Source: Ascidiella aspersa
Taxonomy: Eukaryota
Direction: 5' to 3'
Assembly: GCA_963924565.1 (NCBI GenBank)
Contig: OZ004615.1
Location: 15,748,001 to 15,812,000 of the forward strand
Length of the DNA stretch: 64,000 nt
The position numbers were made by a program, and so were the translations under genes. Shown here piece after piece: positions 41,998 through 62,845 of the stretch (position 1 is the first letter of the stretch; the number at the start of each line of letters is the position of its first letter). The notes beneath the pieces are model-generated. The model worked only from the letters and a program-made list of their open reading frames with translations, searched no databases and was not told the origin of the DNA.

Positions 41998-44900
41998 ATG
42001 AGTGGCAAGATGCTTCATTCACAAAGTTGCCTGGTTTTTGCCCTGATGCTGTCATCTCTTGCTGGATGTACTTTTTGTGAGTAAAACGATTAAACTTTGA
42101 AGCACAATAACATTGTCTACTAAGTGAAAAAAAATTAGAGATAACAATGTAAATAACCATCTTTAAAGATGAAACTAAATCTTTCTGTAGAGTATAAATT
42201 GGTATACAAAATATATATTTTTGCAGTAGCTTCAGCTGAGCACCTTAGAAAGAGCAAAAGTCTGTCATGGAGCAAGTGGACGCGCTGTAGTGTGACATGC
42301 GGCGAGGGTAAGCAGTCACGTGTTAGAATGACGTCACCAAGAGTGGAAACAAGACCTTGTTACAAGAAGTTTTGTCCAAGTAATTATATTTTTAATTTTT
42401 CAACTTACGTAAATGCTCAAGGTAAAATTGTTTGTTATTATTTACAGTTCACTTACAGGATAACGGGGCCTTAATAAGAAAATAATTTAAAATTTAGGAG
42501 CAGAGTTGTAAGACTTACGACAAATATTTTTCTGTAAGTACCCTGCCAAGGTACTCCCGGTGTAATATTATGAGGGTGCCATTATCGCTGGTCAGTAAAA
42601 ATCACAAAATATAACCATTTGTACAATCAAGTGATTCTTAAGATTGCGGCGCCCTAAAAATATCATGGCACAATTTCTACCACTATATGCCAATTTGAGC
42701 CCAACATAAGTGAACAATCGTACTTATAGTTCTATTATACTCTGCAAAGAATGTGTAAATAACATAATAATATCAGTTATGTAATCGATAGGCGTATTCA
42801 AATATGCCATGTATGTCGACTTGGATATTTGTAATACTTAAAGGATATTTTACTAACTTAAAAATGCGCGGCAAAAAGCTATCGTGAGTAACTTGGTGTG
42901 CCGCAACATACAATTTCCGAACCACTGTTATGCACAAAGGTTGAACCAAAACGTACACTGATTTATTTATCTGTGTGTTTTTACCTGTCATCATGTGTGT
43001 GTTTTTTTCTCGTGTTTTCTCGCGTCGTTAACAAACGCTGCCAACTATCCCAGGTTACCTTTCGTGGCCGCGACTCCACTTCAGTGGCAAGTTTGTGGCG
43101 GATGTAAGCACCCTGAACAACATAGCGTGCAACTACGACAACAGGCATTTTACCAGCACCGCAATATCACGTTACAACCAGCGGCAACTTTCAAAAGTTA
43201 GATTTTGATTTTAAACTAGTACTTTACGAACTTCACTATACTCACGTACCATTTATTGAGTTGTCATATCATCAGCGTTTCTAACATTTCAGAACCTGTT
43301 AATAAACATTAAAGGGAAAAACTGTTTAACGAATACAATTTAATGAGATTTAAATACAACTTTTATTAAGTTTTTTACTAAATAAATAAAAGACGTAAAA
43401 TGCATAAGGTTTCCTTTCTTCGACCAGTTGGTGGAAGTGAGAAATAACTTTTCTCACTGCACATCAAGGTGATATACATGAACATCATTACGGAAACCGA
43501 CTCTTACAATATAGAGAGTATATGAAACACATCATCGCACCTTCAAATGTGGAAAGAAAATTGCACAAAAACTCTAACATGTTGGAATTAGAAAAATGAA
43601 ACTTTCACAAGCTGCATAATTAAAACCAGAACCACGCGAATTTCACCTCTTACGAAAACCAGCAAGACAACTGGAATGCGATGGGCAGCGGTCACTTCTA
43701 CTTCGTTGGAACTCGCATCACTTCAATTTGCACAAGCCCCAACAGTTGCAGCACAAAGGCACCTATAACCAAAAGTGTTCTGCGAGGTAAAAACAACTTT
43801 TTGAAAATTGCGACTGAGTCGTGGGCTGCAAAAGCATTATGTAGTTGCGCTCTCATGTTAAGCCTGACGGAAACTATGTTACGCAATTAAGTAACCCTAA
43901 TCTTATTGGTCACATGTTATTGAACTTTGAATCGATTATGTATAAACTGCCATGATAAGTTTGAGAAGTGTCTTTACATGGTCTATGTTTTGTTGAAGGA
44001 TTATGAGATGGATTGATACATAGTCTACTATTTTTATTTCTTTGCTCATTGGAAAAGTTTACCGCTTTACGATCTTATTTTTGCAGAGGCTGAAAGGGCC
44101 CAGATGGTTACCCCTCACCCATATGAGCAGATCGCTTGCGAGGTTTGGGGACTAACCATACAGATCCCGGGGGTGTTGGAAGGACGGTATAAACCGGCCT
44201 GCAATCAGGTGGAAGGAAGTAGGTGCAAGCGGGTGGTTGATAAATTCACCAAAGGATACTCGTTTTGCAACCTGGCGCGTTTTAAAAGGTAAGAATGATT
44301 ATTACATTAAGCATGCGTAGAGCATTACCCTAAACACCCTGGGCGGTATAAAGCGCGGTTTTTGATACTTTTATCTTGCGCTGCCCTTTTTATATATATT
44401 ATCTGTCAAATTATTAAAAAAATGTTGCGTGGACGGTTAAAACGTTCTTACAGACCCGCTGGGGTGCGCATAAACCACTTCTTAAGCAATGGAGTTACAC
44501 ACTAGCGTAACAGGTTGTTTCAGCAATAACAAGATCAAGTAAAATTCACAGTGTCATATGGTTCAAATAACATTTGAAAAAACAGTTAACAAACCTTTAA
44601 AAATAAAATGAAATTAGTAAACGCAATCACTAACACTATGATTAACAGAATCGTTACTATTGTTTTAAGTTCTCCAAAACATTTGTCTGCATGTTTATTT
44701 TTTTCATTTTTGTGTTGTTTTGGAACACATCCAGCCTAATAAAATTATTGTGTAGATTCACTTCCACCGTCAGTGCTACTAAATCAGTTGAAAAATTCCC
44801 TTTCAATGCTAGAATTTTTTTTTTAATATGGCTGTACGTAAATATAGAACTTATTCCAATAAACACATATGTTTAAGATGAATTTTTTGGCAACAATTGC

Positions 44901-47900
44901 GCAACATACTTTGTGTTTTTTTGCAATAATATTACGACATGCATTACTTTTTCCAGCGTTCTACGCAACATCACTTGGTACAGTGAATTTCACAAGCGGC
45001 TATTTCATAATGCCACGAGTCTTAGCATTACGATGGTGATCGACCATTTTAATCAGATAGCCCGCTCTGGCAATGTGTCAGGAACCATAGGTAAGAAAAA
45101 AAGATGAATGTTTGCCTTACACCTAAGACATATATATAACTATTTGAGTTTCTCGTGGAATAAGTAGAACTATTATAGATGCTAGGTAATCTCTAGTACT
45201 AAAATTTGTTGAATAATTTTTTGCTTCTATGGGATAGAGCAGTAAATCCCAAACTGCGTGCCGCGGCACAATAGTGTGCCTCGAGAGATTGTAAAGTGTG
45301 CCGCGAACCTTTTTTAAAATTGGAAAATGTAGTTTTTGTAGGCATACACGCAAGCATTTTTGACTTAAATACGCACTATTTATTACAAACTATTCATATT
45401 GAGACATTTACATGTAGTTTGTCGTGTGTTAAGAGCGGCTGAAAAGTTTCTATATTGTTTTTCTGTTAAAAGTGTGCCGCGAAATATTAAAGATTTTTTT
45501 CGTGTGAGGCGAGCCCAAAAAACGTGGAAACCACTGGGATAGAGGCTTAGCGTGCAATACATTAACACTATTATTTCAGAAGAAAAAAGTTACAGGTGTT
45601 TAACCCAGGGCTGCGGAGTCGGTTAAAAATAACTCGAGTCCGACTCCCGAGTCCGACTTCGGCCGAAAAAATAAACACGAGTCCCGAGTCCGACTCCGGT
45701 CAAATGTGCGATTTTGTCAAGTCCTGAGTCAGGCCCGGACTCAGGACAGTAACTAAAATAACATTGATTTTCAGCAATCCACCTATATAGGGGTGTCGTA
45801 TAATTTATTCACTCACAAAACATGGTTGGAAAATATTTCACCATTTGCTATAACACTTTTACAATTTCCATTTGACGGCCATATGAGTTTTAAAATTCGG
45901 TACTGCGCATGCGCATGTCGGACTCGGGACTCGGGTAGCTTTACAAGGTCTTACTCGATCGACTCCCGAGTCCGACTCTGACTCCGCAGAAAATGCTTTT
46001 GGCCCTCAATCTCAATACTCCTTACCGAATGTAGAACCAAGTATTATCTAATTTAAGAAGTAAATTGACAAGTCATGTATCGATCCATAAATGGGTTAAA
46101 CAACTTGAATGGAAATAAGTGCAGCGCGGGACTAGATTACATTTATTTAAAAAAAATGTTTTTTTGTACAGGTCTGACTTCTGGCGACGACTCACTTGAA
46201 GCGATGGCATCACGGCTTATGATGCCGTTTGGAGATGCTGTGCAGACACCGTTTTACCTTTACAAACATAAGAAAATTGTTTGCATTGACATGGGAGGGG
46301 CGTTGCTCGCGTACGACAATGGCAAACCTAAGTCGAAGGGGGTTTTTCTAGCTGTTAAGGTCCAATGCCGGTAAAGTTACTTCATAATAGTGTAATAGAA
46401 AGGCTTTTATATTTTATTTCAAATTATATTTTCTTATTTTATACTTACAAATATTTTCTTTTCAGTGGCGGTTATTCTAATGTTTCTCTAGTTCTACTTT
46501 TATAAATCTTAGATTTTGATAAAATGAGTTGTCCAATAAATATATTTTCTTATTAAGATAACGACCAACCCAAATTTGGACTGATACACTTTCATATTCT
46601 TTACCGCTGAAATATGAAAGGCGTACGAAACCATCAGATCTTTGTTGATCAAAATATACGTTTGCTAGATTTCCATATTTATACGCCACCTATGTGTGCT
46701 ACAACTCAGTGGTGTCTGCAGCTGGAGATACCTACTACATTCTACAAAAGCTCACTACGAGTTACCTGGACGCCAAGGGAGACTGGTACTGGCTAAAAGG
46801 CGGAATTCTGGACGTTAGCCTTTCGCATTTGCCTTCCAGCGTTTTTCGCTTGCTTGAAAATCACAGGCTGACGATATTGCAAAAAGCTAAGCGTCGCAGT
46901 CACAGGTGAAATACGCAATCGATAGCAAAACATCTAGAGATATGTAAAAACTTATAAATTATAGTCATACAACCAATGCAAGGTTTTACACTAAGGGTGG
47001 TCAGTCAATCCAAGACCTTTTCCAAAAAAAACACATATCTTTGCTTAGCTAGATCTATTGTAAATGTTACACATCAACAACAATGTATATATCTAGGAAT
47101 TATGAACGTGTTTTTTCTTTAAAAATCGATGCATTTACGTTGGTAAAGCTTCTGGCATCTAATGAAATAATTGACCAGAAACACTTTTGAGTCAGAATCG
47201 GCATAGCATAAATAAAAATGCAAAATACTCTGTATCAATGATCAATCAAAATGGGTTACATATGGTCGATATATCGGTACATCGTCGGGCATCCTTAACA
47301 AGAATCGCTACCAGAGTAACGTTTTATTTTAGTTTCTTCAGGATACTTGTCGAAGAACCGAAGTATGGCATGAACGTTGGCGTCTTCAGTTCGGTTATTC
47401 AACGATTAAACGTCAATCAAAGCGTCGTATACAAAACATTCGCTTCAAAGTACGGCAAACCATTAAAAAATGTCCATCTTTCCATGGGATTACTACCGGG
47501 AAAAGAAATTTGTGATTGTGGATTCGAAGGTTGCACGTAGTAAGTTAAGGTTTTTCGTCGAACTTACAAACAAGCTAGATATTATAGGAGTGATAGCACG
47601 ACAACAATGGACAAGTAAGCACGTTTTGCAATCCTGCCTATCTGTATTTATTTATTTATCGTGTACCAACCGAACACCATTGAGGGTTTTACCAAAATGT
47701 CACAAACTAGAACCCCAAAATAATACTTCTTTTAACAAAAAATATGTACTATTTTATATTGTGTTTTGAGACATCAGTAATGGTACAGTGCGCAAAGTCG
47801 AAAAAGGGCCGAAAAACACAACGTTAGGAATTAATTCTGTGCATGTGGGAAAATGCCATTTAGTGACTATTAGGCAGTAACTTAAAGCACAACAATGAAA

Positions 47901-50900
47901 TAATTTGATAAACTTTCTGCAAATCAGCAAGGTTTTGTGTATTGGTATTGTTAAAGCTATGTCTGCCTATTAACTTGGCGTTGCTAAACATACGGTAAGA
48001 AGCAAATTATTTTAAACCGTGACCGTTTAAAAGTAAAAAAAAGATTACTTTTAAGAGTATTACTCCACCTTTCTCTCAGAAATAGAGCCATTTTTTTCTT
48101 TCACGGAGAAAATAAATTATCCCGACGCCTTTCGCTTGAGATAAGGAGCGCCTTTTTACACTGCTCAAATTGTTGTAGACATACCGACTGACCAACAAAT
48201 ATCGACAAATCTAGATATTAGGATTTTTGTCATGAGATATTTTAAAACTGTTTCGACATTTTGATAAAACCAACCAACAAAAAACAGTGTATTATTTTTG
48301 GTTTGTTATAATAATTGTTGTAGTTTTCTCCCTAATTATTTTTATTGCAAAATATTGTTTGTTTAGTTAGGCTGCTTAATTACGGCGAACTCTACACAGT
48401 AAAAAAACACATCCCTTCAGAATTAACCTTGTGTCAATTATTCATTCAGTCGGACAGCAGTGCCCGCGGAATCAATTCGCATCAGTAGTGATAATTCGTG
48501 GACCGGAGCATCTGGCATAAACTCCCACACGGTGTCTCTCGTGAGCGATCCTGGCAGTAACGGTTGCGGCATCGACGGTCAGGTCTACTCGTTGTACACC
48601 AAACTGAAGTGAGAGCGATTTTATCTAGTATTGAAAGGTGTAGTGATGACGCGCAAGATAGTGCGGCATAATTATACTCGTGATTTCGCATATCTTGGAT
48701 TTCGTTAAAAAATGTAAAAGTTAGACAACAATAAATTGGATTTTACAATTTGTTACTATAATTTCAAGTTTATAAATGCTCTATCACAGTAAAACGATTT
48801 TATGTTCTGCTCCCGATTCACCTGTACTGTCCTATAATAATTTACTACTCATCAAAAAACAAAAGTAATAAAAATATGGTGTTTGATAGGTGGTCTACAG
48901 CTAAAAAGATTTTTTTTAAAGTTTGCCAAAATGATTACTTGAACTTCAAAAATTTGCTATGGAAACTTTTTAACAACATAGTTTTGCGTCCTATCGGGGG
49001 GCGTCATGACCTGTTGTTGTTCTATGTGTGGGTGTTGTATTATTCGTGCACTCAATTTTGCGTCGGTGTTACCAATATTAATTTCGAATTAATATAGTTA
49101 TGGTGATACCCAGTATAAAGCGACTCGCCAAGTTATTTTTCTATATTTGTTATAAGATCCACCTTTTAATTGGGGGTATTTTTGCAGGTATGATATATTA
49201 GGCGAAACCGTGAACTTTTGCAATCCCGATGGTGCCACCGATTGCAAAATCGGTCTGGATAATCAATTGACGCAGGTTCGAGCATTTAGCGAAGTCGAGG
49301 TGCCAGATTGCCCGGGATGGCTTGACATATCAGGTGAAGTTAATAGTTTTCGTTAGCTTAACTGTTATTGATCCAAAGAAATATATTATTATCCTCAAAA
49401 AGAATATCCTGTAGCTATTGGCTTCATTTTACATTAAGGCAATTTAAAGAGTGAGGTTAATCCAATCAACAACGATAAGTGTTTTATTGCCTATTCATAA
49501 AAATCTAATAATTCTTCCTAAAAAAATTGCAAATATATACCGTTAACATAAATAAACAACGTTTTTACAATTATGTTTTTAATATATGTTGTTGCATGTT
49601 TGTGAAATGAATTGAATAAATAATGTTTTATTTTTTATTTTAAATCCCTATAATGGCTTTAGGTATATTTGAGCAATACTACAACCTGTATCCTGTAATG
49701 TGGCGAAACGGAATTATTGACTTACATGCGTACGGGGAGGTAAAACAGAAAGCGCGACTCATAAAGACTGCCATGTTTGATCTAGATTTTTCTCATCCAC
49801 GGTAAGCGATTACTTGCTATAAAACAGTGGTTCTTAACCTTGGGTAAATTACCCACATGTGGGTAATTTCAGGATAGCAGGTGGGTAATCAGCTCAACCA
49901 GAATATTTAGAATTATGGTTGTAACAAACAATGTCACAGCTGTAAGTGCCTAAAGGCCCGTTTACACTACAGCTGCACTGAGCGGAGCTGAGCTGCACTG
50001 GGCGTGGAATTGTTTTCACTACAGCTGCAGTGAGCTGCGCTGGGCGTAAAAATCGCGACAAAACGTAATGTTTTTCTATAGCTGCACTGGGCTTGAGTTT
50101 AGCAAAGCGTGGAAATCGCTCCAAATCGTATTTTTTTTTTCAGCTGCACAGGGCTTGAGTTTAGCAAAGCGTGAAACGCTTTAGCAAAGCGTGAAACGCT
50201 TGCCACAATAGAATTTAAATGCAAATTACGCCCAGCGCAGCTCAGTGCAGCTGTAGTGTAAACGGGCCTTAAGTGGTAAGTTGCTTTATTACTTGCACTT
50301 TTTTTTGATGTTTTGAGTCCTTTTGAAACAAGCACAAGGATATTTTATCATTTTTACAATTGTTTTGTCATAGTGATAATTAATTTTTGGGGCCGGTTTA
50401 CGTAGTTTATATTTATGTGACGTAATAGTAAGATTTTCTTGTATCGCTAAGCAGGCTAGCCTAGTTATTTTTTCATTATCAGTTTTCTGTTAGTGTTTAT
50501 TTTTGAAGGTATTCTTAGTAGTTATTTGGAGTAGTTCACAGTGGCTATAAGTGTGCATTTAGAGCTAGTGTTGAGATGAGCGAGCTATAATTTGTTAAAT
50601 AACACTGTTTTATATTTTTAGTATGGTAAAATAGCAAAATGAATAAAATTACATTTTGGGTAATGGGACCTTGATCTGGACCAAAATGGGTAATAAGGGA
50701 AAAATGGTTAAGAACCCCTGCTACAAAATAAACGCATGATTTTTATTAATCCAAAAACAGTTCCTATGGTAATTATTTTTTCTCGAAGTTGTTCGCGTTT
50801 TTCTTTCTTTTTCCTTTGTAATTTGCCAGATATTGTATTACTAGCGTTCGACGTCATTCACAATGAAAAAGGCGATTTGAATATGTGGCTGAAACGTAAA

Positions 50901-53900
50901 GAAATATAATTACCAAGGGAGCTGTTTTTGAACAATATAAAGTCTGGTAGCAACAGTATTATTTCAAACTCCAATCGATAGAAATTGTGTATAATGTATA
51001 GTAATTCAACTTTTGGTAGTTATTCTAAAGTATTTGTGAAACGAAATTCTGACAGCCATGTGAACAAATACTGTGGTGAAGTCGCAAATGTATTTATTTT
51101 TTTATTTCTTACAACGACTACTGTCCTGTTAGATACATGCCAGCCACGAGGGACTTGTCCCTTAGTAAGCAGAAGCTCATTTGGAATTGGATGCAATGCG
51201 GAATGCAGTTTGACACACGAAATAAAACACGCGGTTTGTACATCAAAAATAGTTCTAGCAACATAAATATACCTAATGATATTTAATTCCACGTTCGAAG
51301 TTTAAATTTATAGTTCATTTTAATACCAATACTTATTAATTATCCTAATATCCTATACAATTTTCTGCCTAAATAAAGTGGGTTTAAATCAAAACAAAAA
51401 ATTTAGTACTGGTTTAATTTTAGTGTTTATATGATATGACAGTGTTTCCCAAGTTATGAGTCTCTGCTTATTCTTTTGGTTCTCTTGTCAAAATACAAAA
51501 AAAACCTTAAAGTTTATTATAGACAAAGTTAAAAACAAATGATGAATATTAAGAAAGTGGTGAACGTCACGCTTGACATAGAGTTGTTACCTTATATTTG
51601 CAATTTGTCAACAAACATATTCCAATAAGTTGGATTCAACACGTGTAAGTTGCGGGGTGATTTTATATACACAATACACCAACAAAGACTGTAGGTGGTA
51701 CGACTCGTACCCTACAAAAATGCTTTGTTTTAAGTTTTTCAAACAGAAATAACCTATTTTATAGGATATTAACCTATTCTTCCTATAAACAGAATATTAG
51801 TTTACCCAGTTGTTATACATATAGTTAAAATTACCGAACTGAATGTGACTTGGTTACCTACTTTACACAACGTATATCAGTTTACCACATATAAGGTATT
51901 TTACGTCTAATAAACTGAAGTCACTTTTTCCCGCTTTAGCTTTTCGTAAAGCCTAGGACTAGAACTATCTGGAGTCTCGTAAATAATGAGTATCATCTTT
52001 GTATCAGCGTGAAAAATGATGTGGACAGGTTGTGTGCAGTAATATTTTCTTTTGTAGTATATGTTTTTCGTTTTGTATTTCGTCTATAATAGTGATTCGT
52101 CTGCAGCTCAGTTTTACCGCTTTTTTATTAAATATCTTGCTACATAACCCTTTCTCAATTAACACCTCTTAAACTACCAAGTTTAACAGGATAAATGCAT
52201 AATATGACTTTTGAGCTTGGCGAAAAATTATACGTTTTATTTGTAAAAGCATGCAGCTTTGGGAGCTAGCAGCTAGTTTGCTAAAACACCTCGATGTTTT
52301 GACGTAGGCCACGTCTCCTTTAATTAAAAAGTTTGCCAAGTTAAACTACGTTAATTTCGGACGTCATCTTGAAACAACTTTAAATCCCAAAAAACAAATT
52401 CCTGAATTTCCTCTTTATTAGATGAGGCCTGGGTTGCCAGATTTGCATTGTTTGAAACTTTCGAAATTTTTCGGAACAAAGAAAAATATTGGCAACCACT
52501 GGGGGAGTGGTATTTTACTCAACCCAACCTTTACCCTGCTAAAGTGCTTTCATAGATGCATAGCATTCTCATAACCGAATATAATGCAAACATGTGATTC
52601 AGAAATAGTATAACACATAACAGATTGCTCCAAATTTTGCTTCATTAAATTTTGTTTAAAATGTCGAAATCGGATTGAAAGCCATATTTAAAAAAATTGA
52701 TATAAACTGTAATAGTATTTCGTAAGCAGTAAAACGACCATTAATCGTTTTGTTTCAAACCCGTCAGGAGAATGCAGCACCGATACCGTCAAGGAAGGCA
52801 TAGTTGAATTGAAGGCCCTTATCCAAAAAATCGTCATGCTTGAACTTGCAACCATCCCCCCTTACTTCACGGCGTGGCTGAGTCTCAAGACGGAAGCCGC
52901 AAGAAACTATGAAATTGCGCGACGACTCAAGTCAATCTTTAGTGAAGAAATGCTACATATGTCCCTGGCGGCCAATATGCTGAATGCGGTGTGCATACGG
53001 GCTTAAAGTTATACATTTTTTCGTACCTATAACATTCCAATTTTGGAATGCATTCACAAGAGTTTTACTTTAAACGTTTATCATTTCGGATGACGTTTCT
53101 AATTTAATTTAAAATCATATAAAGATCGAGGCTCAAAACAGATACTTTTAAAAAAGGTTTATCCACAATCCGATGATATTTGGAGCTAACCATAAAAACA
53201 TTCAAGCTAACAACTAAATGTAATTTACATAATTTAGTTCTATGGTACTTCTCAAAATAATAAAACTAATGCCCAATATGATTTATTGAAAACACACATT
53301 GCGTTTTACAATACGTCAGCACTTTGTAGTATTGCTTTTAGGTTCGTAAGCGTAATTTGATTGCATTTAACTCGAACCTTTACCAAAGTGACAGCCGAAA
53401 TTAAATCCGGTTGTAACGTTCGTATAGATTGGAGGAACCGTAAACCTTACAAACATCAACGAACTGCCTTCCTATCCAACTCCGATTGGAAGTGGTTCTT
53501 TTTACGACATTTCAGCCAACATTCTACTTCCGTTGGAGCGCTTCTCCATTCCACTTGTCCGGGATGTATTTTCGAACGTCGAGATGCCAGCGTCAAAGGA
53601 AGATAGAAAGGTTTGGAGTAATTACATAATTATTTGTAGGGATTAGGCAATCATTGGTTGTGAAGAGTTGTACAGATGTTAGCTGCATTTCGTTGCCATT
53701 CTACAGAGTATCGGGTCGTAATGTTTTAAACCTCCCTAAGCAATAATGCTGTAATGGTCTGTCAATGCGTTTAAAGTTAAAGGTTTATTTATTGACTCAG
53801 ACCGATCAGGCTTATTTTCCAATGCAGGAACTGCTGCGAGCAGCGCAACTCTGGAAGATTCTCTTTCAGTTTACGGACGAGAAACCTACGAATAAAATGG

Positions 53901-54832
53901 CCCTGCTCTTGGAGGAACTTGCCGAAAGTGATGAAATAGACGAAGACCCGCTTCAACTAGAAGCAAAACCCTATGATTCGTTGGAAGAACTCGAAACAAG
54001 GAGCTGGTTGGCGATATACGAATACGCAAGAAAGCGATTGGATGCGCATAGAAGCTCGTTGGCCGGCACTATCGGGGGCTTGTATGGCAAATTGTTGATG
54101 CATATCATACTACTTGAATCTTGTGCAAAGCTGTACGGTTTCGACGACGGAAGGTCGAATACCAACACTATCTTCGTCGGCAACTTCTCCAAACAACTGA
54201 ATATAACCTCTTGGTACGACCCTTCCCAGAAATTCGCCCTGAACGAAACCATTGCATCGATGCAGGTATCGGATTGCAGTATGTGTGATAATTGTATTAT
54301 GTCGTCAAAAGCAAATTGCATACGCTTGTTTAAAATGAAGTTTTGCCTCACTGAAATAATTTGTCAACCCAGCTGGTCACTGTTAGTTGGCATTTAATAG
54401 CGCCTAAATTTAGATTAACAGCAAAGTAAAGGAAACATTATAATTAGATGGTACTCCACAACACCAGTATTATAGTAAATGATCAAACTGCCATGACTGT
54501 CAAATCTGTTGTAGACTGTTTTATCATTTAAACGGTGCTAATTTGAACCATACCTCGCATAGAAGTTTGTTCTATAAAATTATAAGTAATATTACAATCG
54601 ACAAAATAGACTCATATCCTACTCCATCATCCTTCGTCATTCGTTATATGCTACTTTTTCAAGGAACAAATGAGACAGGAAGAGCTTGAGATAACACAAT
54701 CGCAATCCAGTTTCGTGATCAAGAATCCTATTCCTCCAGCTTACTCGAAAGATTCCAACCTGTCGATGCCCTTGTTCCCGATCTTCGATTTACGTACGGC
54801 AATTCAAGCGGTCGTTGAAATTGTCTATCAAG
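41998..54832 (+). CDS. Secreted TSP1 + VioB/RebD/StaD-like (ferritin-like C-domain) fusion protein; at least 17 exons, >1008 aa, 3' incomplete
   Basis: Exons 41998-42076, 42227-42379, 43054-43196, 43663-43786, 44087-44288, 44957-45090, 46172-46370, 46669-46905, 47342-47539, 48450-48608, 49188-49333, 49663-49801, 51133-51233, 52768-52988, 53428-53610, 53828-54265, 54664-54832. All GT-AG, phases compatible, 3025 nt with no stop. Motifs in order: signal peptide; WSKWTRCSVTCGEG; SYLSWPRLHFSGKFVADVSTLNN; WNAMGSGHF; EVWGL; SGTIG; DPG...IDGQVY; QYYNLYPVM; YMPATRDLS; LELATIPPY; EEMLHMSLAANMLNAIGG; TIGGLY; AVVEIVYQG. Confidence 0.88.
42227..42379 (+). other. Thrombospondin type-1 repeat exon (phase 1-1)
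   Basis: WSKWTRCSVTCGEGKQSRVR...ETRPCYKKFCP: WxxW, CSVTCG and RxR motifs; a 4-Cys short variant. Confidence 0.9.
45607..45988. mobile_element. hAT MITE, GAGTCC-rich family
   Basis: CAGGGCTGCGGAGTCGG...CTGACTCCGCAG; collinear with 16041-16421. Confidence 0.85.
49825..50720. mobile_element. hAT MITE carrying a nested Harbinger MITE
   Basis: TIRs CAGTGGTTCTTAACC/GGTTAAGAACCCCTG; TSD ctataaaa/ctacaaaa. Confidence 0.85.
49954..50269. mobile_element. PIF/Harbinger-type MITE
   Basis: Long perfect TIRs AGGCCCGTTTACACTACAGCTGCACTGAGC; 3-bp TAA TSD on both sides. Confidence 0.88.
52768..54832 (+). other. Ferritin-like (PF12902/VioB C-terminal type) domain exons
   Basis: ELKALIQKIVMLELATIPPYFTAWLSL...EEMLHMSLAANMLNAIGG...PSYP...LERFSIPLVRDVFSNVEMP...TIGGLY...IFVG...LFPIFDLRTAIQAVVEIVYQG follows the family consensus as I recall it. 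Confidence 0.88.
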
Positions 54833-55151
54833 GTATGCAGTTAAAACAAACAGTTGAGTGATTCACAGCGTCGCAATCTATATTCGCCTCAGCGGTTACG
54901 CGCGCTCAACCACAGCCAGGCACTAAAGAAATTATGAACCATATATTGTATTGTCGGCCGATTTAGGATGTTGTTTACAATGTATTAGGGAAAAAAGTCT
55001 TGGTGCAAGTAAATTTTTTAAACGTTATATACAGAGTAAAATACAAACAACTGAATAAACGTAAAGCGTAACCTCAGTATGCAACACATTTTGATGGACG
55101 TTTCAGGCCTTATAAAGCGACGAACATAAAGCACTCTACCGCTATTGTTTT

Positions 55152-55351
55152 NNNNNNNNNNNNNNNNNNNNNNNNNNNNNNNNNNNNNNNNNNNNNNNNN
55201 NNNNNNNNNNNNNNNNNNNNNNNNNNNNNNNNNNNNNNNNNNNNNNNNNNNNNNNNNNNNNNNNNNNNNNNNNNNNNNNNNNNNNNNNNNNNNNNNNNNN
55301 NNNNNNNNNNNNNNNNNNNNNNNNNNNNNNNNNNNNNNNNNNNNNNNNNNN
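55152..55351. other. Assembly gap (200 N)
   Basis: Run of 200 N; the true size is unknown. Confidence 1.
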
Positions 55352-57980
55352 CATCTCCACAGGACTCAAAATTGCATTTCTACGCAAATGTGTAAAAATG
55401 CAAGTTCTACTGCCATCCAACCATAAAAAGGGTATGGACTTTGATCTACTTTTATTACAACAGTCGAGGCGCATTCATGAGCAAATTGTCAAGATCCCTA
55501 CTGCTCGCATAGACCAAAAGACGTGGCAATTACTGTCAAACGAAACTAAACATCAGCTTTTACAACATAAATGCCAAGTTCGCCACAAGCTTGACAACAA
55601 GTTCCGTTGGCTATGGGAAAAGCAAAGACGCCAAAGGAACCTTATTGGCGCTGCAGTCAATGGAAGAAAAAATCGAAACAGACGAAGCAGACAAAGGTAT
55701 CGTGCACGCAAAGCTGGAATTAAGGCGAGGGAAGAGAGACAAAATGCTAATATGATGATTATTAACAAATCAGGTCAAATGCTTGATATTAACGCTAAAT
55801 TATTGTTAGCAAAAGGGTTAAACTTTGCACCCACTCCGAACTGGAGTAATGCAATAAGGGACAAAGAATGGATTAACTTCCAATCGCACATTCGACGTAT
55901 TGAATGGGCCAACGTATTCAAAGATAAGGAAGATTCTACCAATATTTTTATACCACCTTACAAATTGAAAATTCCCAAGTTTTCCAGACCCCACAGAGAC
56001 CAATTAGATTTGGAAACAGTTATTTACGTGGAACTGGCTGAAGCTAAACTGCGAAACGTAGCTGCGACCGTGCGTAAAGAATACAAAGGCAGAAACAACC
56101 TATCCTTCCCCCTCCGAAATAGCCTAGAGTACCTCAAGCGCCTTACCTCCAGTCGGACGCTAGCATTCTGTCGGGCTGACAAAGATGGCAAAACCATTGT
56201 GGTTGACTATGAAGATTATAACTTCATTGTGGAAAATGCACTTCATGATTTCCAAAGTTTAAACCTCAACCAAAGAACTTTTCAAGCCAGATGTACAGCG
56301 CTACGAAAGACGTGCGAAGATGCAGTGAAGATGTTGCATGCACAAGACGCCATTTCGGACGATCTACTTCTCTGTTCCGTTGGGGTTAAAATCACCTTTT
56401 CTTCAGCTTCAGAACGTGGTGACGAAGCATGGAGATAATTTTTACCAGCAGAAAGATGGTATAGTTACAGGCGATAACCACTCAGTATCGCTGGCTAACA
56501 TTACAATGCATTATATAATAAAACCATGGATTGAAACCTTAAAGGAAGCACAAGTCTTTAAAAGATTCATCGATGACATTGTCTGGATTGTTGCAGGCGG
56601 AGCAGCAAACAGACACATTCAAACATCTTTGGAAAAGGCACTTGCAGCACATGGACTCCGTCTCCTATTTCGTTCCTTCTGTACAACCGACGTACGTGGA
56701 CAGGTCGACTTTCTTGACGTACTCCATGTCCCATGTGCAGAATCACCCTTCGGCTTCAAACTAAAGGATTTCAAAAAAGAAACTGCAAAACATCGGCAGT
56801 TCTTACACGGAACTTCCCACCACCCCATTTCCGTTTTTAAATCAATCATAACTGGAGAGGCGACACGCCTTAGACGACTAAACGAGATGGAGGAAGACTA
56901 CTCACTGAGCCTTCAAAATCTCGGCAAGAAATGTCTGCGGTCGCAGTTTCCTCCAAGGATGGTTAAACTCACGTTAAAAACTGCAGCACAGTTTGAAGCT
57001 AAAGTGCGCCAAAGGCAGACAAAGAAAAACAGAAAGGACCTTGTAGTTTGGCCCACAGCCTTTCCAAAGCTGCTTAAAACTACCTTAGACGAAAGAAGGC
57101 TGCAGCCACAAGCGATGCTTGTCTACAAAAGACCTCCGACACTTGGAAGCGTACTTACCAACTACCGCGCAATTAGTCAACCGGCAAGTACCATCCCTTC
57201 CACTGGAAAGTCAATCCCGTGCGGCCACTGCTGTTTATGCGGTCATTATAAACAGGCAGAGAGCATGGTCTCGAAGGTTTTCACAGTTCCCACGCGCAAT
57301 GGGAACATAGCACTGAAACAAGCACTTTGCTGCACCGACCACAGTATTTACATGGCGTCCTGTCGGCAATGTGGCGAACGATACGTCGGGCAAACAAAAA
57401 ATTCATTTGCAACAAGGTGGAGAGGCCATAGAGCAGTATGGAAAACTTTCAAGTACAAAGAAAATAACGACAAAGCAGCACTTCTGCGCCACTATGCTGA
57501 CAAACACATGTCCATGCTGAGGCAGAGTGTTTCAGCATAACATTTTTAGAAAAACCACCTTTTAATAAGTTGGACATATGTGAAGCAAAGTGGCTAAAGG
57601 TAGTCAACGCAACCATTAACATCCAAAAAATGGTTCTACCGCGAATAAGATAAACCGCTATCTTATCGCTACCCATTCGAGCCGCATTTTACCGTCTAGC
57701 ATCTCGCACTGCTCATATGTATTTTTCCCCCCTTCCTCTACTTATTTGTGTCGCCTACTCATTTATCCCAGTCGTGTTGCCTGCGAGGCTGTAGTGCTTT
57801 TCATTGCGTTTTTAGTCTATTATAATGTTTTAATATTTTATTGTTTCTTTTATTGGTTTGTTGATGGCTGCGCTCTGATTTTATTTATTTGTACTCTTAC
57901 AGGAACTGATGATGCCACTTTGGCGAAATATATTTTCCTTTAAACAAAACGTCTGATCCTGTTTTTACTCATGTTTTTAA
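55352..57980 (+). mobile_element. Penelope-like retroelement (RT + GIY-YIG endonuclease), internally deleted and frameshifted, with 3' pLTR
   Basis: Frame open from the gap (FLRKCVKMQVLLP), LAKGLNFAPTP, RADKDGKTIVVD; then FYQQKDGIVTGDNHSVSLANI, KRFIDDI, DFLDV, SHHP...KSIITGEATRLRR, CGHCCLC, SIYMASCRQCGERYVGQT (GIY-YIG). Frame breaks near 56390 and 57530; final stop at 57653. The 3' boundary is approximate. Confidence 0.92.
57901..57939 (+). ncRNA. Minimal type I hammerhead ribozyme in the Penelope pLTR
   Basis: AGGAA-CTGATGA-t-GCCA(ctt)TGGC-GAAA-tata-TT-TTCCT: stem I AGGAA/TTCCT, stem II GCCA/TGGC, palindromic ATATAT stem III, AUU cleavage triplet. Confidence 0.85.
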
Positions 57981-58663
57981 CTATGAGTTTTACTTGCTTA
58001 TAAATTTGTTGTTGGTATCACACCCCCTTAACAGCAAAACGTGCCGTCATGTATTGTCGGTGAATCACGAATTCAAAACTCCATTAACTAAAAAAAAAAT
58101 TACATCTGAGTAGAAAGTATATGTGTTTCAGAGGCCAATCATTCATCATAACACAGCCGGATTATATTACCTTTAGGTATGCGTGGATATCAAATAACCG
58201 TAATGTGAATTGTTTTTTCTACGCGGGCAGCTTAAAACCTTTAAAGCAGGCAGTCGTTCAAGGCAAAACTGCATACTAAACCGGTCCTTAACCAGCGTCA
58301 CGATTCAGTGGTTATTCCAAAACTTTGTGCTTATTTTTTTACAGTTTCGTAGAAAATACTAAAGTGCTTCTTTCTTAGAACGTGACGTTTTTAGTTTCGT
58401 GCTTAGTTGTCCTTATTTGATTAAAAATATTTTTGCTAAACATACTTCGTGACACTTAGTATAAAATATGTGTACCTTTAAAATTTCGGATTTTTTGAAC
58501 CCAAGAAGTTAAATGAACTGTTATGGCTTAAGCTGTTCCGTAGTTGAGAGGACATCAGCAACGAACTGTAATAGTGTTTCGAGATATTCTGCTTCCCTGT
58601 TTGTTATTTATCGTGATATTTATAACACCATGGTCGCGGCTTAACACTATTTAGAGACTAGAA

Positions 58664-60172
58664 CAGTTGTTCTCAACCTTTTCTGCTTCGTGGCCCCCTT
58701 TGAAAGGCTATAGAACCTCGTGGCCCTCCTGCTTATAAAAATATCTAGCGTTGTGTTTAACTGTTTTTACTTATTTTACTTCTTTCTTCACCTTAATAAC
58801 AAATATGGGTTTTAATAAACGAATAAATGTACTTAGTTTCCAAAGATTTCTAAAAATTTAACAAAATCAGTAATTTTGCAAAAAAATAACAAATCAGTCA
58901 TTTAAATTTGAATTAATATAGTAGTCATTACAAAGCTTTATCTTACAAAGGTATTTTTCACATTCGGCTCTGTTTTGTACTGAGCCAAGCGAACGTTATT
59001 AGATTCGTCGAGATGATTTCTGAATTTTCGTGTTTTTTAAAACGCGTTAGTATTACTTGAGAAATACGCTGTGCATAACCTCGCTAAATATTGGTCTAAA
59101 ATTGACCTTGAGTAACCCTGCACCATACTTGCGTTTTACGAGTTTCTTTCGCAAGTTAATGCCCTTTTAGAAAATTGCGAACTTCTGCAACTGGGCATTA
59201 GGCTACACCAGTGATCGGCAATTTTTTTGTCGTGGCCTAAAGTACGCTTTACAGAGTCCTTCTACGTAAAACCACTACGAAAACAGTGGATACGTGACGC
59301 ATATGGCACATGAAAGGATTCGAAAAAATTACTTATAGTATAAATTAACGAAATTGTACAGTTATAAGTCACACGACTTACACGGAGCCTTGATATCGAA
59401 AACATCGGCAAGCCATGATGATAATATAAAACCCAAAAACAGGTTACGCGCGAAGCGCGCCAAAAATTTTGCGTTCACTTATAAGTTGGCAAAACATATA
59501 GCTTGACGGGCACTCTCAGGGCCACACTTGGCAAGCGGGCCTAAACCACGTTGAGACAATATCAAAATCCTTACCCACACGAACTTTTAAAATACAGTAC
59601 AATGAATGTAGGGCTATCACGCGGCCCACAACTACATGATAACGCTAAGCTATTCAAAAGTAACTCGCGACCCATCATATATATGACTCTGCGGCCCACA
59701 GTTTGCCGACCACTCGGCTACACGTTAGTTGCTCGCCCAACAGCATTCGACGCACACTTTATGATTAGGCGAAGGTTATCACAAAGTAATAGGTCGCCAG
59801 AAAAAAAGCTGGCTCCGCACTACTTGGCTACATATAAAGCAGCAAAGTAATTGTTTAGCCATAGCGATCGGCCTTTATCCAAACGAACGTTCGATTAAGT
59901 GTAACTTTTCGTGATAGAACGAATCCAATTTTATACTTTAAACGTGCCTACGGACGCGTCAAAGAACGTTTTTCGTTTTAAATTTGTTACGAACGTTACA
60001 AGAAAGTTTTCCAGTCATAATAAAAATGACATATTTAAGTTAACTTGCAAATTTCGAACATAGTGATGCTTTGGTTTTGCAATACCTATAGGTACAGAGT
60101 TATGCCCGTGGCCCCCCAACGACCTCTCCGTGGCCCCCCAAGGGGGCCGAGGGCCACGGTTGAGAACCCCTT
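58664..60172. mobile_element. Non-autonomous hAT element (~1.5 kb including a nested MITE)
   Basis: Termini cagttgttctcaacc...ggttgagaacccctt; TSD gactagaa/gtctagaa; gtggcccc subterminal repeats. Confidence 0.8.
59209..59715. mobile_element. Nested hAT MITE
   Basis: Termini cagtgatcggcaa...ttgccgaccactc; perfect 8-bp TSD GGCTACAC. Confidence 0.85.
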
Positions 60173-61471
60173 GTCTAGAACATACCAATTAGAAAACCTT
60201 TCAATTATACAATACATACGCTTTACGAAGTATTAGTTTATGTTAAATATTACGATGAAGCAATTTGCGCTGAACAACCGGTTTTATTTTATTTGCTTCT
60301 CCAAACTCCATTGCCAGGATACACTAAAACATGATAGTTTTTGGGAAGTGTTGCCGGAAACGCGGCATTTGTAGTTTTATGGATAACAGTCTTGTTGAAA
60401 CTCAAACAGTCTTCATAAATATAGGTGCAAAGAAGTTTATGCTTTAAACTACATAGGGTTTATGCAGGTTCCGCTTGCACATATGTGCACGTGCGCGATA
60501 TGGATCCGTGTAACACTACATATTAAGCAGTTTGTTCCTGCAAATTTTATGTTTAACGCAAATTGACCCGGAATGACTTAGTACAATGTTGATGGTAATT
60601 TTAATAATGTGGCTATTGAATTTACGCAGGGACCGGAAAAGAAATGAAAGCAACTACTCTGACTATAGGCCTGTAAAATAAATCTATGACAAAGCAACCT
60701 TTGGGCAAAAACACCATTCAAACTAAACAATAAACGCCTGTTCGCATTAATGCAAATCACTTATATGGTGGTCGGGGAAATTTTGGTAATGATTATGAAA
60801 AACTTTTCAGCCTATTCATTATTTCAGAATATATTGCTTTATATTTTATTATTGAATATTACCCTTGTATGGCTTCCTCATTTATTTCTACTCTCACCAG
60901 CCTGTCAAAACAATAATGTTTAACGATTCTTTTAGAAAGCATCACAAGTTGTATTGTTTGTGTTCGAGATTCTCTTTTTTTGTACCAATCCATTTTTTGT
61001 TTCTCAGGAAGTCCGCTGTCGAAAAATAATTGCCTTCTACGTCTCTGAAATTATTATTGTTTGTTGGATTAAAAAGAATGCGCATAATTACATGCGCTAT
61101 AGGCACAAAGTTTTTCGTATTATATCCCCATATTTATCAACACTGAAACAGATTGATTTAATCGTTTGGATTAAAGCATGCCGTGAAACAATTTTCGTGT
61201 CTATTAGTCATGTAGAAAAGTGAGAGAACATACAATAGATATTGATTTTTTGCAATGAACATTTTGTTTTTAGTTTACTTTAAGCATGTGATGTAATAAT
61301 GTACAGTCTTCGCCAAACACGCTTTAATTACAAATTGACATTTTGTTCTTGTTATATACTGTTTACAACGACGATTAGATATCAATGTCGTTTATGGTAA
61401 TTGTTGTTGACTATTTAGCTTTATGTGTCCATACAATTTAGAGCCTTATTTGAAGTATCTCACTAGAAAAA

Positions 61472-61874
61472 ATGAAACTTGGATTACCTTTCATTGCGTT
61501 ACTTGGAATTCTTATGCTGATGCCGTTTCTTGTGGTAGTCTTTACAAAATTCTCTCCGTATAACAACTTACGTCAGATCAAATCACAAAAACATCAAACT
61601 ATTATGGCACGAAATAACATCAACAGAAACAACCAAAATAAAACTTCCCTTGGAAGTATTTCTGAAGTAAAGACTACGGAATTTTATCCAAATAAGGAAG
61701 AAAATAAACAACCGAGAGCAAACTCAGGCATTCAGTTAAATAAAACCGATGCTGTAAAAGATGACGTTGGTGGGAAAGAGCGTTCGGTTAAGGACGACAA
61801 GGACTTCATGAAAATTATGAAAGAAAGAATGACGAATAGGAGAAAAATGGTGAAAGCTGCTTGTCAACGCTTGG
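61472..61874 (+). CDS. First coding exon of a type II membrane (Golgi-type) protein, possibly carbohydrate sulfotransferase-like; further exons not identified in the window
   Basis: aaaATG start, N-terminal TM anchor, polar stem, then ERMTNRRKMVKAACQRL (R..R...+..C, as precedes the CHST8-14-type catalytic domain); G|GTGAG donor at 61875. Confidence 0.55.
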
Positions 61875-62005
61875 GTGAGCAAAACTAAGTAGATTATGGT
61901 TTACACAATGTAAACACTATTCTTTATTGTGCAATTTTAGATTTTCAAATTGGTAGTGTTCATAATAAATTAACTATTATTGCAATGTGAATTGTTTAAA
62001 CGTTT

Positions 62006-62845
62006 TCATTATAATTATTTGTCCGTTAACATTAAAATTACCGCTTAGTTGACATACCTAGAATTACCGGGAGCGGCCAAAATGACAGTTTGTCCTATAA
62101 AGAAAGGGTTCACAATTATTTAGCTTTATTTTATTCGATGTTTCATTAACTATTAAGTCTTTTCTTTTGCTTTTAAAAGAAAAAAATGCTTGTTCAAACC
62201 TTAGAACTTTTTTGGTATTGATGTGATAGGCCAGGGGTTCTTAACTTTTTTTGTATGTTTTACCCTTTTAGCCAAGACGATTATTAGATTTACCCCGAAT
62301 ACCGTATATTAAATGGTGCTCATGCATGACGTAACAATGAAGTAACTAAGATATAAAAAGTATCAATTAGCGAAGCATAACGTTACCGACCCTAAACGAT
62401 AATATAATCAAAATAGTCTACTATAGGCTATCTTCAAACTAGCAGTTATGCTGAACTCGGAAAGTAGGCTAACAATACCTACAGCTGGCACAATTTTTCT
62501 GTCCCGCCAACTTATGTGGATATTTTGATTGATAGCTCATTTACACCCTAAAACGAGGAAATTTACCCCCTAAGGAAAATTTACCCCAGGTTAAGAAAGG
62601 CTGCGATAGGTGGTCCGCCATGTGTAAAGCAGGGTCAAACTAGGCTGATATTGAGCGGCCTTAGGCAAGACCCGTTCATGTAATGATTAATTATATTTGT
62701 CCGTTAACATTAAAATTACCGCTTGGTTGACATACCTAGAATTACCGGGAGCGGCCAAAATGACAGTTTGTCCTATAAACAAAAAGTTCACAATTATTTA
62801 GCTTTGTTTTATTCAATGTTTCATTAACTATTAAGTCTTTCCTTT
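62006..62845 (+). repeat. Local direct duplication (~160 bp; ~62006-62170 and ~62685-62845)
   Basis: Near-identical tttgtccgttaacattaaaattaccgctt...tcattaactattaagtcttt blocks. Confidence 0.85.
62232..62603. mobile_element. hAT MITE
   Basis: Termini caggggttcttaac...gttaagaaaggctg; degenerate TSD tgataggc/cgataggt. Confidence 0.75.

What the first reader, a model, noticed from the sequence alone, without database searches (positions are those of the whole stretch)
41998..54832. Intron-rich animal gene encoding an apparently full-length bacterial VioB/RebD/StaD-like enzyme: probable domesticated horizontal transfer
Seen: 17 GT-AG exons splice into one stop-free 1008-codon frame, and several key exons are missing from the ORF track. 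After the TSP1 exon the motifs run collinearly: SYLSWPRLHFSG.F.ADVST.NN, WN..GSGHF, E.WGL, DPG...IDGQVY, QYYNLYPVM, YMPATRDLS, then a ferritin-like domain (LELATIPPY, EEMLH, ..QG). Established (recalled): this order, from an N-terminal PR.HF.G to YMP.TRDLS plus a PF12902 ferritin-like domain, is the architecture of ~1000-aa VioB (violacein) and RebD/StaD (chromopyrrolic acid synthase) and of uncharacterised bacterial relatives. The characterised members are heme enzymes that oxidatively couple indole-3-pyruvate imine. Inference: a bacterial secondary-metabolism-type oxidase was acquired long ago and intronised (16+ introns holding host MITEs, so not contamination), and it is still intact.
Basis: partly seen in the sequence, partly recalled or inferred. 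Interest (0 to 1): 0.95.

Follow-up and report, generated by a model that had tools for sequence, protein, structure and literature searches.

The report
Secreted VioB-superfamily oxidase gene in tunicate
This is a real, expressed, intron-rich tunicate gene for a secreted protein related along its whole length to a large bacterial enzyme family that includes the violacein enzyme VioB. It is not a VioB orthologue, its 3' end is missing from the assembly, and the same family occurs from corals to amphioxus, so any bacterial transfer was very ancient.

Summary
17 GT-AG exons (41998-54832, + strand) splice into a stop-free frame of about 1016 codons: signal peptide, one TSP1 repeat, a roughly 600-aa beta-rich domain, and a PF12902 ferritin-like domain.

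The model is not full-length. RNA reads continue past the donor at 54832 into an exon absent from the window and from the whole assembly. An N gap starts 320 nt downstream. About 190 C-terminal residues are missing, judged from the Ciona relatives.

The protein is homologous to true VioB over about 790 columns (hhalign probability 99.9%). Close tunicate relatives score 19 bits against the VioB model, whose cut-off is 1250. The family belongs instead to an abundant, uncharacterised bacterial group of roughly 900-aa "ferritin-like domain-containing proteins", about 35% identical.

Animal members come from tunicates, amphioxus, hemichordates, Lingula and a coral. They form one clade (92/91 support) with the coral at the base, and nearly all carry signal peptides. 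This fits a single pre-bilaterian acquisition followed by vertical descent, not a recent transfer.

Nine of 11 exonic variants are synonymous. The conserved Glu / Glu-Met-x-His residues align with the di-iron and haem ligands of bacterioferritin. The substrate is unknown.

Public databases already list the orthologues as "uncharacterized". I found no paper on them. The scan also flagged a paralogue elsewhere in this genome.

The parts
41998..42076 (+). Exon 1: start codon and hydrophobic signal-peptide-like N-terminus
   Evidence: ATG at 41998, open to the donor at 42076. Kyte-Doolittle maximum 2.38 over residues 11-22.
42236..42379 (+). Exon 2: thrombospondin type 1 repeat
   Evidence: PF00090, 30.3 bits against a cut-off of 21.6. 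Aligns to Ciona P0151 residues 26-69.
43054..43196 (+). Exon 3: start of the bacterial-type protein (SYLSWPRLHFSG... motif)
   Evidence: Residue 2 of bacterial P0208 aligns to model residue 75, which is the exon 2/3 junction codon. tblastn hits from the Gloeothece and Mycetohabitans N proteins.
43630..43786 (+). Exon 4 (WN..GSGHF)
   Evidence: tblastn with Ciona P0151 residues 117-167. DP model.
44087..44288 (+). Exon 5 (EVWGL)
44957..45090 (+). Exon 6
   Evidence: Ciona P0151 residues 232-279, 46% identity..
46172..46370 (+). Exon 7
46669..46905 (+). Exon 8
47342..47539 (+). Exon 9
48450..48608 (+). Exon 10 (DPG...IDGQVY)
49188..49333 (+). Exon 11. The acceptor is uncertain; 49290 is the alternative.
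49663..49801 (+). Exon 12 (QYYNLYPVM)
   Evidence: 64-66% identity to Ciona. Bacterial hits.
49786..50343 (.). High-copy repeat (MITE-like) in intron 12
   Evidence: Word depth is up to about 2000-fold above the flanks in two DNA runs.
51133..51233 (+). Exon 13 (YMPATRDLS)
   Evidence: RNA depth 0.54 on one strand only.
52768..52988 (+). Exon 14: first two helices of the ferritin-like domain (LELATIPPY, EEMLH)
   Evidence: PF12902, 54.5 bits. RNA depth 2.2. Three variants, all synonymous.
53428..53610 (+). Exon 15 (holds the invariant Phe and Glu of the ...VF..VEMP stretch). No RNA read was laid on it.
   Evidence: Zero depth.
53828..54265 (+). Exon 16: variable acidic insert plus the middle of the ferritin-like domain
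   Evidence: RNA depth 2.6.
54664..54832 (+). Exon 17. It ends in phase 1 at a good donor (AG|GTATG). This is not the last exon.
   Evidence: Four RNA reads continue from here into unassembled sequence.
55152..55351 (.). Run of 200 N. It is the likely site of the missing 3' exon(s). I did not fill it.
   Evidence: The next-exon sequence is absent from the window and the assembly. No C-terminal match in 54800-64000.

Best explanation
The locus is a functional tunicate gene. It is closest to the Ciona intestinalis trio LOC100184225 / LOC100181841 / LOC100183538. It encodes a secreted multidomain protein with four parts: a signal peptide; one TSP1 repeat; a beta-rich domain of about 500 aa with no solved relative; and a helical ferritin-like (PF12902) domain of about 450 aa.

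The last two parts together form one ancient unit, also found in true VioB and in hundreds of uncharacterised bacterial proteins of about 900 aa. In some bacteria the unit is split into two adjacent genes.

An ancestor of cnidarians and bilaterians most probably acquired this unit once from a bacterium. The gene then gained a signal peptide, cysteines and introns. It was passed on vertically with many losses and with local duplications (four copies in this genome). In tunicates it picked up a TSP1 exon placed exactly in front of the old start codon.

Shown here: gene structure, expression, purifying selection, whole-length homology, a single animal clade, and conservation of the core residues.

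Inferred: the protein is an extracellular iron-dependent oxidase. It would have a bacterioferritin-like di-iron site, with the invariant Met of E-M-x-H possibly binding haem as in bacterioferritin. It would oxidatively transform, and perhaps couple, an aromatic or enamine substrate as VioB does. The substrate is unknown and need not be an indole.

The assembled model lacks the last ~190 residues, including two ligand positions, only because of an assembly gap.
For: - Structure and frame: 17 GT-AG exons, 1016 codons, no stop.
- RNA: strand-consistent depth on exons 13, 14, 16 and 17 and none in introns. Four reads run on from 54832 into a sequence whose translation contains the family's invariant Q-G-E-G.
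- Selection: 9 of 11 listed exonic variants are synonymous, the other two are V>I and D>N.
- Orthology: 44% identity to Ciona P0151 over residues 26-1016 of 1208. In both trees the model is sister to the three Ciona paralogues (100/99).
- Bacterial kin: 35% identity over 650 columns to Chitinophaga P0208 from its residue 2. At least 580 bacterial loci. Hemichordate P0045 matches bacterial proteins of about 900 aa at E 1e-120 with 88-90% coverage.
- VioB link: hhalign probability 99.9% over 786 columns, with shared invariant residues.
- One animal clade with support 92/91 and 99.
- Signal peptides in nearly all animal members, and 12-36 Cys against a bacterial median of 5.
- E / E-M-x-H aligns to the bacterioferritin ligands in 1nf4.
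- AF2 model of P0045: pLDDT 85.5, a beta-rich N half and a helical C half that matches 3hl1.
Against: - No exon-exon junction other than the run-on at 54832 reached the tool's listing threshold. Exon 15 had zero RNA depth. Only 6% of one RNA run and only the 3' 5.5 kb of the gene were examined.
- The backbone of the tree is a polytomy. 'Bacteria as one side of a branch' appears in 37% of bootstrap trees, so the direction of transfer rests mainly on taxonomic distribution.
- My survey of eukaryotes was limited to the best 120-150 hits per search.
- The iron/haem site and the oxidase activity are inferred from alignment and from recalled biochemistry of VioB/RebD/StaD and bacterioferritin. They were not tested.
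- The true C-terminus was not seen.
Confidence: 0.72

Rival explanations
1. It is a true functional equivalent of VioB/StaD/RebD. The animal itself would dimerise indole-3-pyruvate imine to a chromopyrrolic-acid-type bis-indole.
For: Whole-length homology and a shared core with VioB. From memory: ascidians and hemichordates yield indolocarbazole, bis-indole and bromo-indole metabolites.
Against: Close relatives score 19-54 bits on TIGR04492 against a cut-off of 1250. Identity to VioB is about 25%. VioB lies on a branch of length about 1.4-1.5 outside the whole family. I did not look for a partner amino-acid oxidase next to the gene. The protein is secreted, unlike cytoplasmic VioB.
Confidence: 0.07
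2. The family was inherited vertically from an ancient eukaryotic ancestor and lost almost everywhere except in some marine animals. There was no horizontal transfer.
For: The animal sequences form one clade with the coral outside the bilaterians. The careful tree does not resolve whether that clade nests inside bacteria.
Against: No non-animal eukaryote appears among the listed hits, even though EukProt, UniRef and nr are sources. Atlas neighbours are bacterial. At least 580 bacterial loci span 10 or more phyla. The 86-row tree groups the animals with one bacterial subclade (SH-aLRT 95). The animal additions begin exactly at the bacterial Met.
Confidence: 0.12
3. The protein no longer acts as an enzyme. 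It is a secreted matrix or iron-binding protein that keeps only the fold.
For: TSP1 is a matrix-adhesion module. The protein has many Cys and sequons. Exon 16 holds a long, variable, acidic insert inside the ferritin-like domain.
Against: Every invariant core position that is assembled is kept: E, E-M-x-H, N, F, E, Y. The run-on RNA encodes the G-E-G. Most variants are synonymous.
Confidence: 0.08
4. It is a decaying pseudogene, a contaminant or an assembly artefact.
For: The 3' end is missing. A Penelope-like retroelement sits just past the gap. RNA depth is low and exon 15 is uncovered.
Against: 1016 codons without a stop. Introns carry a host high-copy repeat. The same intron-containing locus appears in contigs from two DNA runs of the species and in reads of a related organism. 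Transcripts are spliced and strand-specific. There are three more paralogues on another chromosome.
Confidence: 0.02

Closest known systems
Uncharacterised bacterial 'ferritin-like domain-containing proteins' of about 870-1000 aa (e.g. Chitinophaga qingshengii P0208, Undibacterium sp. TS12 L018, MAG P0114), and their split two-gene form (Gloeothece PCC 7822, Mycetohabitans endofungorum)
   Same: They are collinear from the first residue (MSYL..PRLHF.G) to the end of the ferritin-like domain. Identity is 30-35% over 650 or more columns, with the same invariant residues.
   Different: The bacterial proteins have no signal peptide, no TSP1, few Cys and no introns. Some sit beside ebo-cluster genes or small glyoxalase-fold proteins. 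No function is known for them either.
VioB (TIGR04492) and, by recalled literature, StaD/RebD chromopyrrolic acid synthases
   Same: Same two-part architecture and length. hhalign probability 99.9% over 786 columns. Shared PRxHFxG, YxxxYPxM, MPxTR[DE]LS, E, E-M-x-H, G-E-G and H.
   Different: About 25% identity, and HMM scores 20-60 times below the equivalog cut-off. VioB lies on a separate long branch. VioB is cytoplasmic and encoded in an operon with VioA/C/D/E.
Annotated but unstudied animal homologues: Ciona intestinalis LOC100184225/LOC100181841/LOC100183538/LOC100180317, Styela clava LOC120338304/LOC120338016, Clavelina lepadiformis LOC143461065, and Branchiostoma, Saccoglossus, Ptychodera, Glandiceps, Lingula and Oculina proteins
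   Same: Same family and the same secreted design. The tunicate proteins share the TSP1 repeat and align to all 16 exons after the first.
   Different: Identity to the window's protein is 36-44% within tunicates. Non-tunicate members lack TSP1. Databases name them only 'uncharacterized protein' or, automatically, 'Iminophenyl-pyruvate dimer synthase domain-containing protein'.
Caulobacter CC_0557 ferritin-like protein (PDB 3hl1) and bacterioferritins (1nf4, 9viw)
   Same: The helical C-terminal domain matches 3hl1 (Foldseek E 1e-8, TM 0.69 on the target; profile E 4e-21). The first two helices align with the bacterioferritin E and E-M-x-H ligands.
   Different: Those proteins are single-domain and lack the beta-rich N half. 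No solved structure covers that half or VioB itself.

Membership tests
VioB / iminophenyl-pyruvate dimer synthase equivalog (NCBIfam TIGR04492) | Whole-protein score at or above the curated cut-off of 1250 bits | tested here: not met
   The window's exons gave no TIGR04492 hit at E<=1. Ciona P0151 scored 19.1 bits, coral P0199 20.3, Lingula P0173 26.9 and bacterial P0114 53.9. True VioB loci score 1779-1908.
VioB / iminophenyl-pyruvate dimer synthase equivalog (NCBIfam TIGR04492) | Architecture of about 1000 aa: N-terminal PRxHFxG domain followed by a PF12902 domain, homologous throughout | tested here: met
   hhalign probability 99.9%, E 2e-32, 786 aligned columns covering 1-884 of the family against 1-942 of VioB. 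Shared invariant residues.
VioB / iminophenyl-pyruvate dimer synthase equivalog (NCBIfam TIGR04492) | Pathway partners (an L-Trp oxidase of the VioA/StaO/RebO type, and VioE/C/D or StaP/C) encoded nearby or elsewhere in the genome | not tested
   I did not search this genome for such partners.
VioB / iminophenyl-pyruvate dimer synthase equivalog (NCBIfam TIGR04492) | Haem-dependent coupling of two indole-3-pyruvate imine molecules | not testable with these tools
   Needs protein and an assay.
Pfam PF12902 Ferritin-like | Score above the gathering threshold of 22.3 bits | tested here: met
   Exon 14 alone scores 54.5 bits. Full-length relatives score 129-214 bits.
Pfam PF00090 TSP_1 | Score above the gathering threshold of 21.6 bits | tested here: met
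   30.3 bits in exon 2. Also present in the Ciona and Styela relatives.
Uncharacterised family of ~900-aa fused ferritin-like domain proteins (bacteria plus animals) | End-to-end alignment and the invariant core (P-R-x-H-F-x-G; M-P-x-x-R-D-L-S; E; E-M-x-H; N; F..E; Y; G-E-G; H) | tested here: met
   Every core position encoded by an assembled exon is kept. G-E-G and the last His fall in the unassembled exon, and the G-E-G is seen in the RNA run-on.
Horizontally acquired bacterial gene domesticated in animals | Integrated in a host chromosome, with spliceosomal introns and host repeats, and transcribed | tested here: met
Horizontally acquired bacterial gene domesticated in animals | Animal sequences nested within bacterial diversity with support | tested here: inconclusive
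   The quick 86-row tree groups the animals with one bacterial subclade (SH-aLRT 95). The careful 60-row tree leaves a basal polytomy. The site-heterogeneous model did not finish.
Horizontally acquired bacterial gene domesticated in animals | Absent from non-animal eukaryotes | tested here: inconclusive
   None among the named hits. Only the best 120-150 hits were listed. Short PF12902 proteins are reported in fungi (PMC4417212).

The most novel reading that the evidence does not exclude
Marine invertebrates themselves encode a secreted VioB-type coupling oxidase. It would dimerise arylpyruvate or indolylpyruvate imines outside the cell. In that case 3,4-diarylpyrrole (lamellarin/ningalin-type) or bis-indole scaffolds, or a cross-linked tunic or pigment chemistry, which are usually credited to symbionts, would be made by the animal. 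The enzyme would have been acquired from bacteria before cnidarians and bilaterians split.
Probability: 0.1. Interest if true: 0.9.

Novelty: new variant of a known kind. Interest (0 to 1): 0.62.

Why it matters
VioB, StaD and RebD are the only characterised members of this superfamily, and they build the core of violacein and the indolocarbazoles.

This work shows three things about the wider family. First, a sister family is very common in bacteria. Second, one branch has lived in animal genomes since before the Bilateria, where it was retargeted to the secretory pathway. Third, it is still under selection in tunicates, amphioxus, hemichordates, a brachiopod and a coral.

That makes it a candidate host-encoded extracellular oxidase in phyla known for unusual aromatic alkaloids, and a clean example of ancient gene domestication. 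Signal peptide, cysteines, introns and a TSP1 exon were all added at the old start codon.

It is directly testable in Ciona, which has named orthologues and genetic tools. It also warns against automatic names: 'iminophenyl-pyruvate dimer synthase domain' does not mean VioB activity.

Tried and rejected
- The spliced protein was never sent to a search, fold or profile tool. Exons were searched one by one by reference. The joined model was used only inside local scripts, for the frame check, pairwise alignments, column look-up and the trees.
- tblastn of the YMPATRDLS exon against plasmids gave nothing.
- NCBIfam on single exons gave nothing useful.
- The search for homologous proteins with Ciona P0151 alone found 5 proteins. 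With alignment A1 it mostly pulled in unrelated TSP1 proteins, because the index words come from the first 500 residues.
I read bacterial context from fetched loci instead.
- The PMSF (C20) tree made no progress in about 10 minutes. I used LG+G4 instead.
- A weak match of a paralogue's C-terminus at 57445-57522 lies inside the retroelement ORF and was rejected.
- Searches for the next exon in 54800-64000 with five tunicate C-termini gave only noise. The run-on sequence has no match in the window or the assembly.
- I did not try to fill the N run.
- Foldseek matches of the N half to complement C3, alpha-2-macroglobulin and sialidase chains have TM <= 0.16 and rmsd around 20 A. I read them as generic beta-sandwich similarity, not as homology.
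- The HGT compendium paper holds no searchable supplement.
Full report
**What is in the sequence**

Pfam finds a TSP1 repeat in 42157-42471 (30.3 bits) and the start of a PF12902 ferritin-like domain in 52716-53003 (54.5 bits). No Pfam or NCBIfam model matches the other pieces.

I took the tblastn hits of the Ciona intestinalis protein P0151 as anchors. A dynamic-programming search over AG/GT sites then gave one phase-consistent chain of 17 exons. These total 3049 nt, or 1016 codons plus one base, with no stop. Its count of 1008 codons differs only through boundary choices at exon 11 and exons 16/17.

The joined model was used only in local scripts. It was not sent to any search, profile or fold tool; those were given single exons by reference.

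**The model is not full-length**

Exon 17 ends in phase 1 at a strong donor (AG|GTATG) at 54832. In the one RNA run available for this species, four reads continue from that point into at least 30 nt that match nothing in the laid stretch. Read in frame, the run-on encodes the family's invariant Q-G-E-G and matches the paralogues.

That sequence has no match in the window or in the 308.6-Mb assembly. The Ciona relatives extend about 190 residues beyond the point where the model stops. No C-terminal similarity exists in 54800-64000.

A run of 200 N begins at 55152, followed by a Penelope-like retroelement with RVT_1 and GIY-YIG hits, both weak. So the last exon or exons are unassembled.

**Expression and constraint**

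About 6% of the RNA run was read.

- Depth on exon 13 was 0.5, on exon 14 2.2, on exon 16 2.6 and on exon 17 1.6.
- All of this was in one mate orientation, and depth in the intron bins between these exons was zero.
- Exon 15 had no reads and exon 12 almost none. This may reflect 3' bias, chance, or skipping of exon 15, and it remains open.
- No internal junction reached the tool's three-read listing threshold.

Contigs from two DNA runs of the species carry the same intron-containing locus. Reads of a related organism match both exons and introns. Of the 11 listed variants that fall in exons, 9 are synonymous and 2 are conservative, V>I and D>N. That is far from the roughly one-in-four synonymous share expected without constraint.

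The stretch 49786-50343, in intron 12, is a very high-copy repeat.

**Relatives in animals**

A scan of 1.84 billion protein representatives with exon 14 returned tunicate proteins first:

- Ciona LOC100184225, 1062/1208 aa
- Styela clava LOC120338304
- Clavelina lepadiformis

It then returned proteins from a hemichordate, amphioxus and Lingula. A whole-length search with the hemichordate protein added Ptychodera, Saccoglossus, many amphioxus paralogues and the coral Oculina patagonica. All are named 'uncharacterized protein' or, automatically, 'Iminophenyl-pyruvate dimer synthase domain-containing protein'.

The window's model is 44% identical to Ciona P0151 over residues 26-1016. The genome holds three further copies on contig C3. 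These belong to a second tunicate subfamily of the Ciona LOC100180317 type, at 46-47% identity. Some intron positions differ between the two subfamilies.

Only tunicate members have TSP1. Nearly all animal members have a hydrophobic N-terminal leader and 12-36 cysteines, against a bacterial median of 5.

**Relatives in bacteria**

- On plasmids the relatives are split into two adjacent genes: a 'hypothetical protein' of 633-662 aa and a 'ferritin-like protein' of 360-372 aa. Both hit the window collinearly.
- In genomes and metagenomes the fused form of 870-1000 aa is abundant. At least 580 loci were found in Bacteroidota, Acidobacteriota, Pseudomonadota, Actinomycetota, Chloroflexota, Planctomycetota, Verrucomicrobiota and Myxococcota.
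- Chitinophaga P0208 aligns from its residue 2 to model residue 75, which is the codon spanning the exon 2/3 junction. The alignment runs on for 650 columns at 35% identity. This agrees with note s1-792899.

**Relation to VioB**

The curated VioB model TIGR04492 has a cut-off of 1250 bits. It gives 19-27 bits for the animal proteins and 54 bits for a bacterial member. The family is therefore not VioB.

I fetched eight true VioB genes, scoring 1779-1908 bits. A profile of 127 family members aligns to them with probability 99.9%, E 2e-32, 786 columns and 25% identity. The following motifs and residues are shared: P-R-x-H-F-x-G, Y...M, M-P-x-x-R-[DE]-L-S, E, Y, E-M-x-H, N, F, E, Y, G-E-G and H. 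The two groups are sister families within one superfamily.

**Trees**

| Tree | Method | Animal clade support | Notes |
|---|---|---|---|
| 86 rows | LG+G4, quick | SH-aLRT 99 | Animal clade groups with one bacterial subclade (95) |
| 60 rows | LG+G4, careful | 92/91 | Deep backbone is a polytomy |

In both trees the coral is outside the bilaterians. Tunicates, hemichordates and cephalochordates are each 100% supported. The window's protein is sister to the three Ciona paralogues.

A single ancient origin in animals is therefore supported. A bacterial donor is inferred mainly from distribution and from the gene's architecture.

**Mechanism**

- An AlphaFold2 model of hemichordate P0045 (pLDDT 85.5, pTM 0.77) has a beta-rich half (about residues 50-470) and a helical half (about 480-935).
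- The helical half matches the Caulobacter ferritin-like protein 3hl1. The beta half has only generic beta-sandwich matches.
- No structure exists for VioB.
- The profile aligns the invariant Glu and E-M-x-H with helices A and B of bacterioferritin (1nf4..MELH.. and ..DEMRH..).
- From established knowledge of bacterioferritin, those residues are two di-iron ligands, and between them lies the Met that ligates haem.
- From memory, VioB, RebD and StaD are haem proteins.

I therefore propose a secreted iron/haem oxidase. The substrate is unknown.

Bacterial neighbours give only weak hints. A small glyoxalase-fold protein is next door in 13-16 of 52 loci. In three distant lineages the gene sits among ebo-cluster genes: TatD, a 3-dehydroquinate-synthase-like gene, EboE, UbiA and a phosphodiesterase.

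**Literature**

Full-text searches found no paper on animal VioB-like genes. The ebo papers do not mention this family.

**Verdict**

This is a real and interesting gene. It is a secreted, TSP1-fused animal branch of the VioB superfamily, of ancient and probably bacterial origin. It is not a VioB orthologue, it is not complete in this assembly, and it is not unique to this animal.

Noticed in passing
L018:3198-12335; L009:2160-8421; L010:5713-13001: In three distant bacteria the family's gene sits among ebo-cluster genes: TatD, a 3-dehydroquinate-synthase-like gene, EboE / xylose-isomerase-like, UbiA prenyltransferase and a type I phosphodiesterase. The three are Undibacterium (fused form), Gloeothece PCC 7822 and Mycetohabitans endofungorum (split form). 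The ebo papers I searched do not mention this link.
   Followed up: partly
52 bacterial loci among L018-L096, ORF directly downstream of the ~900-aa gene (e.g. L032:8871-9329, L034:9010-9444, L045:8787-9215): A small protein of about 140-150 aa from the glyoxalase / bleomycin-resistance / dioxygenase superfamily is an immediate neighbour in 13-16 of 52 loci, mostly in Bacteroidota.
   Followed up: partly
window 55398-57537 (+): Retroelement ORFs with weak RVT_1 and GIY-YIG hits, a combination typical of Penelope-like elements. They lie directly after the N run that interrupts the gene.
   Followed up: partly
window 49786-50343: Very high-copy short repeat inside intron 12. Word depth is around 80,000-200,000 in DNA runs against 45-100 in the flanks. 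It is transcribed on both strands and shows many internal deletion variants.
   Followed up: no
window 50530-50901: A few RNA reads in the gene's orientation fall in intron 12/13, where no exon is predicted and the Ciona alignment leaves no room for one. This could be an alternative exon or repeat-derived reads.
   Followed up: no
G000:C3 31.30 Mb (-), 31.64 Mb (+), 32.92 Mb (-); loci L011-L016: Three paralogues of the second tunicate subfamily (Ciona LOC100180317 type). One large exon in them spans what is exon 16, exon 17 and the missing exon in the window's gene. They have an intron where the window's exon 14 is continuous.
   Followed up: partly
G001:C75:280703-283337 (L097, L098): Undibacterium sp. 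TS12 carries a second locus in addition to its fused copy. This locus has weak VioB-model hits in two neighbouring open frames of 403 and 737 aa, possibly a split pair in the order ferritin-like then N domain.
   Followed up: no
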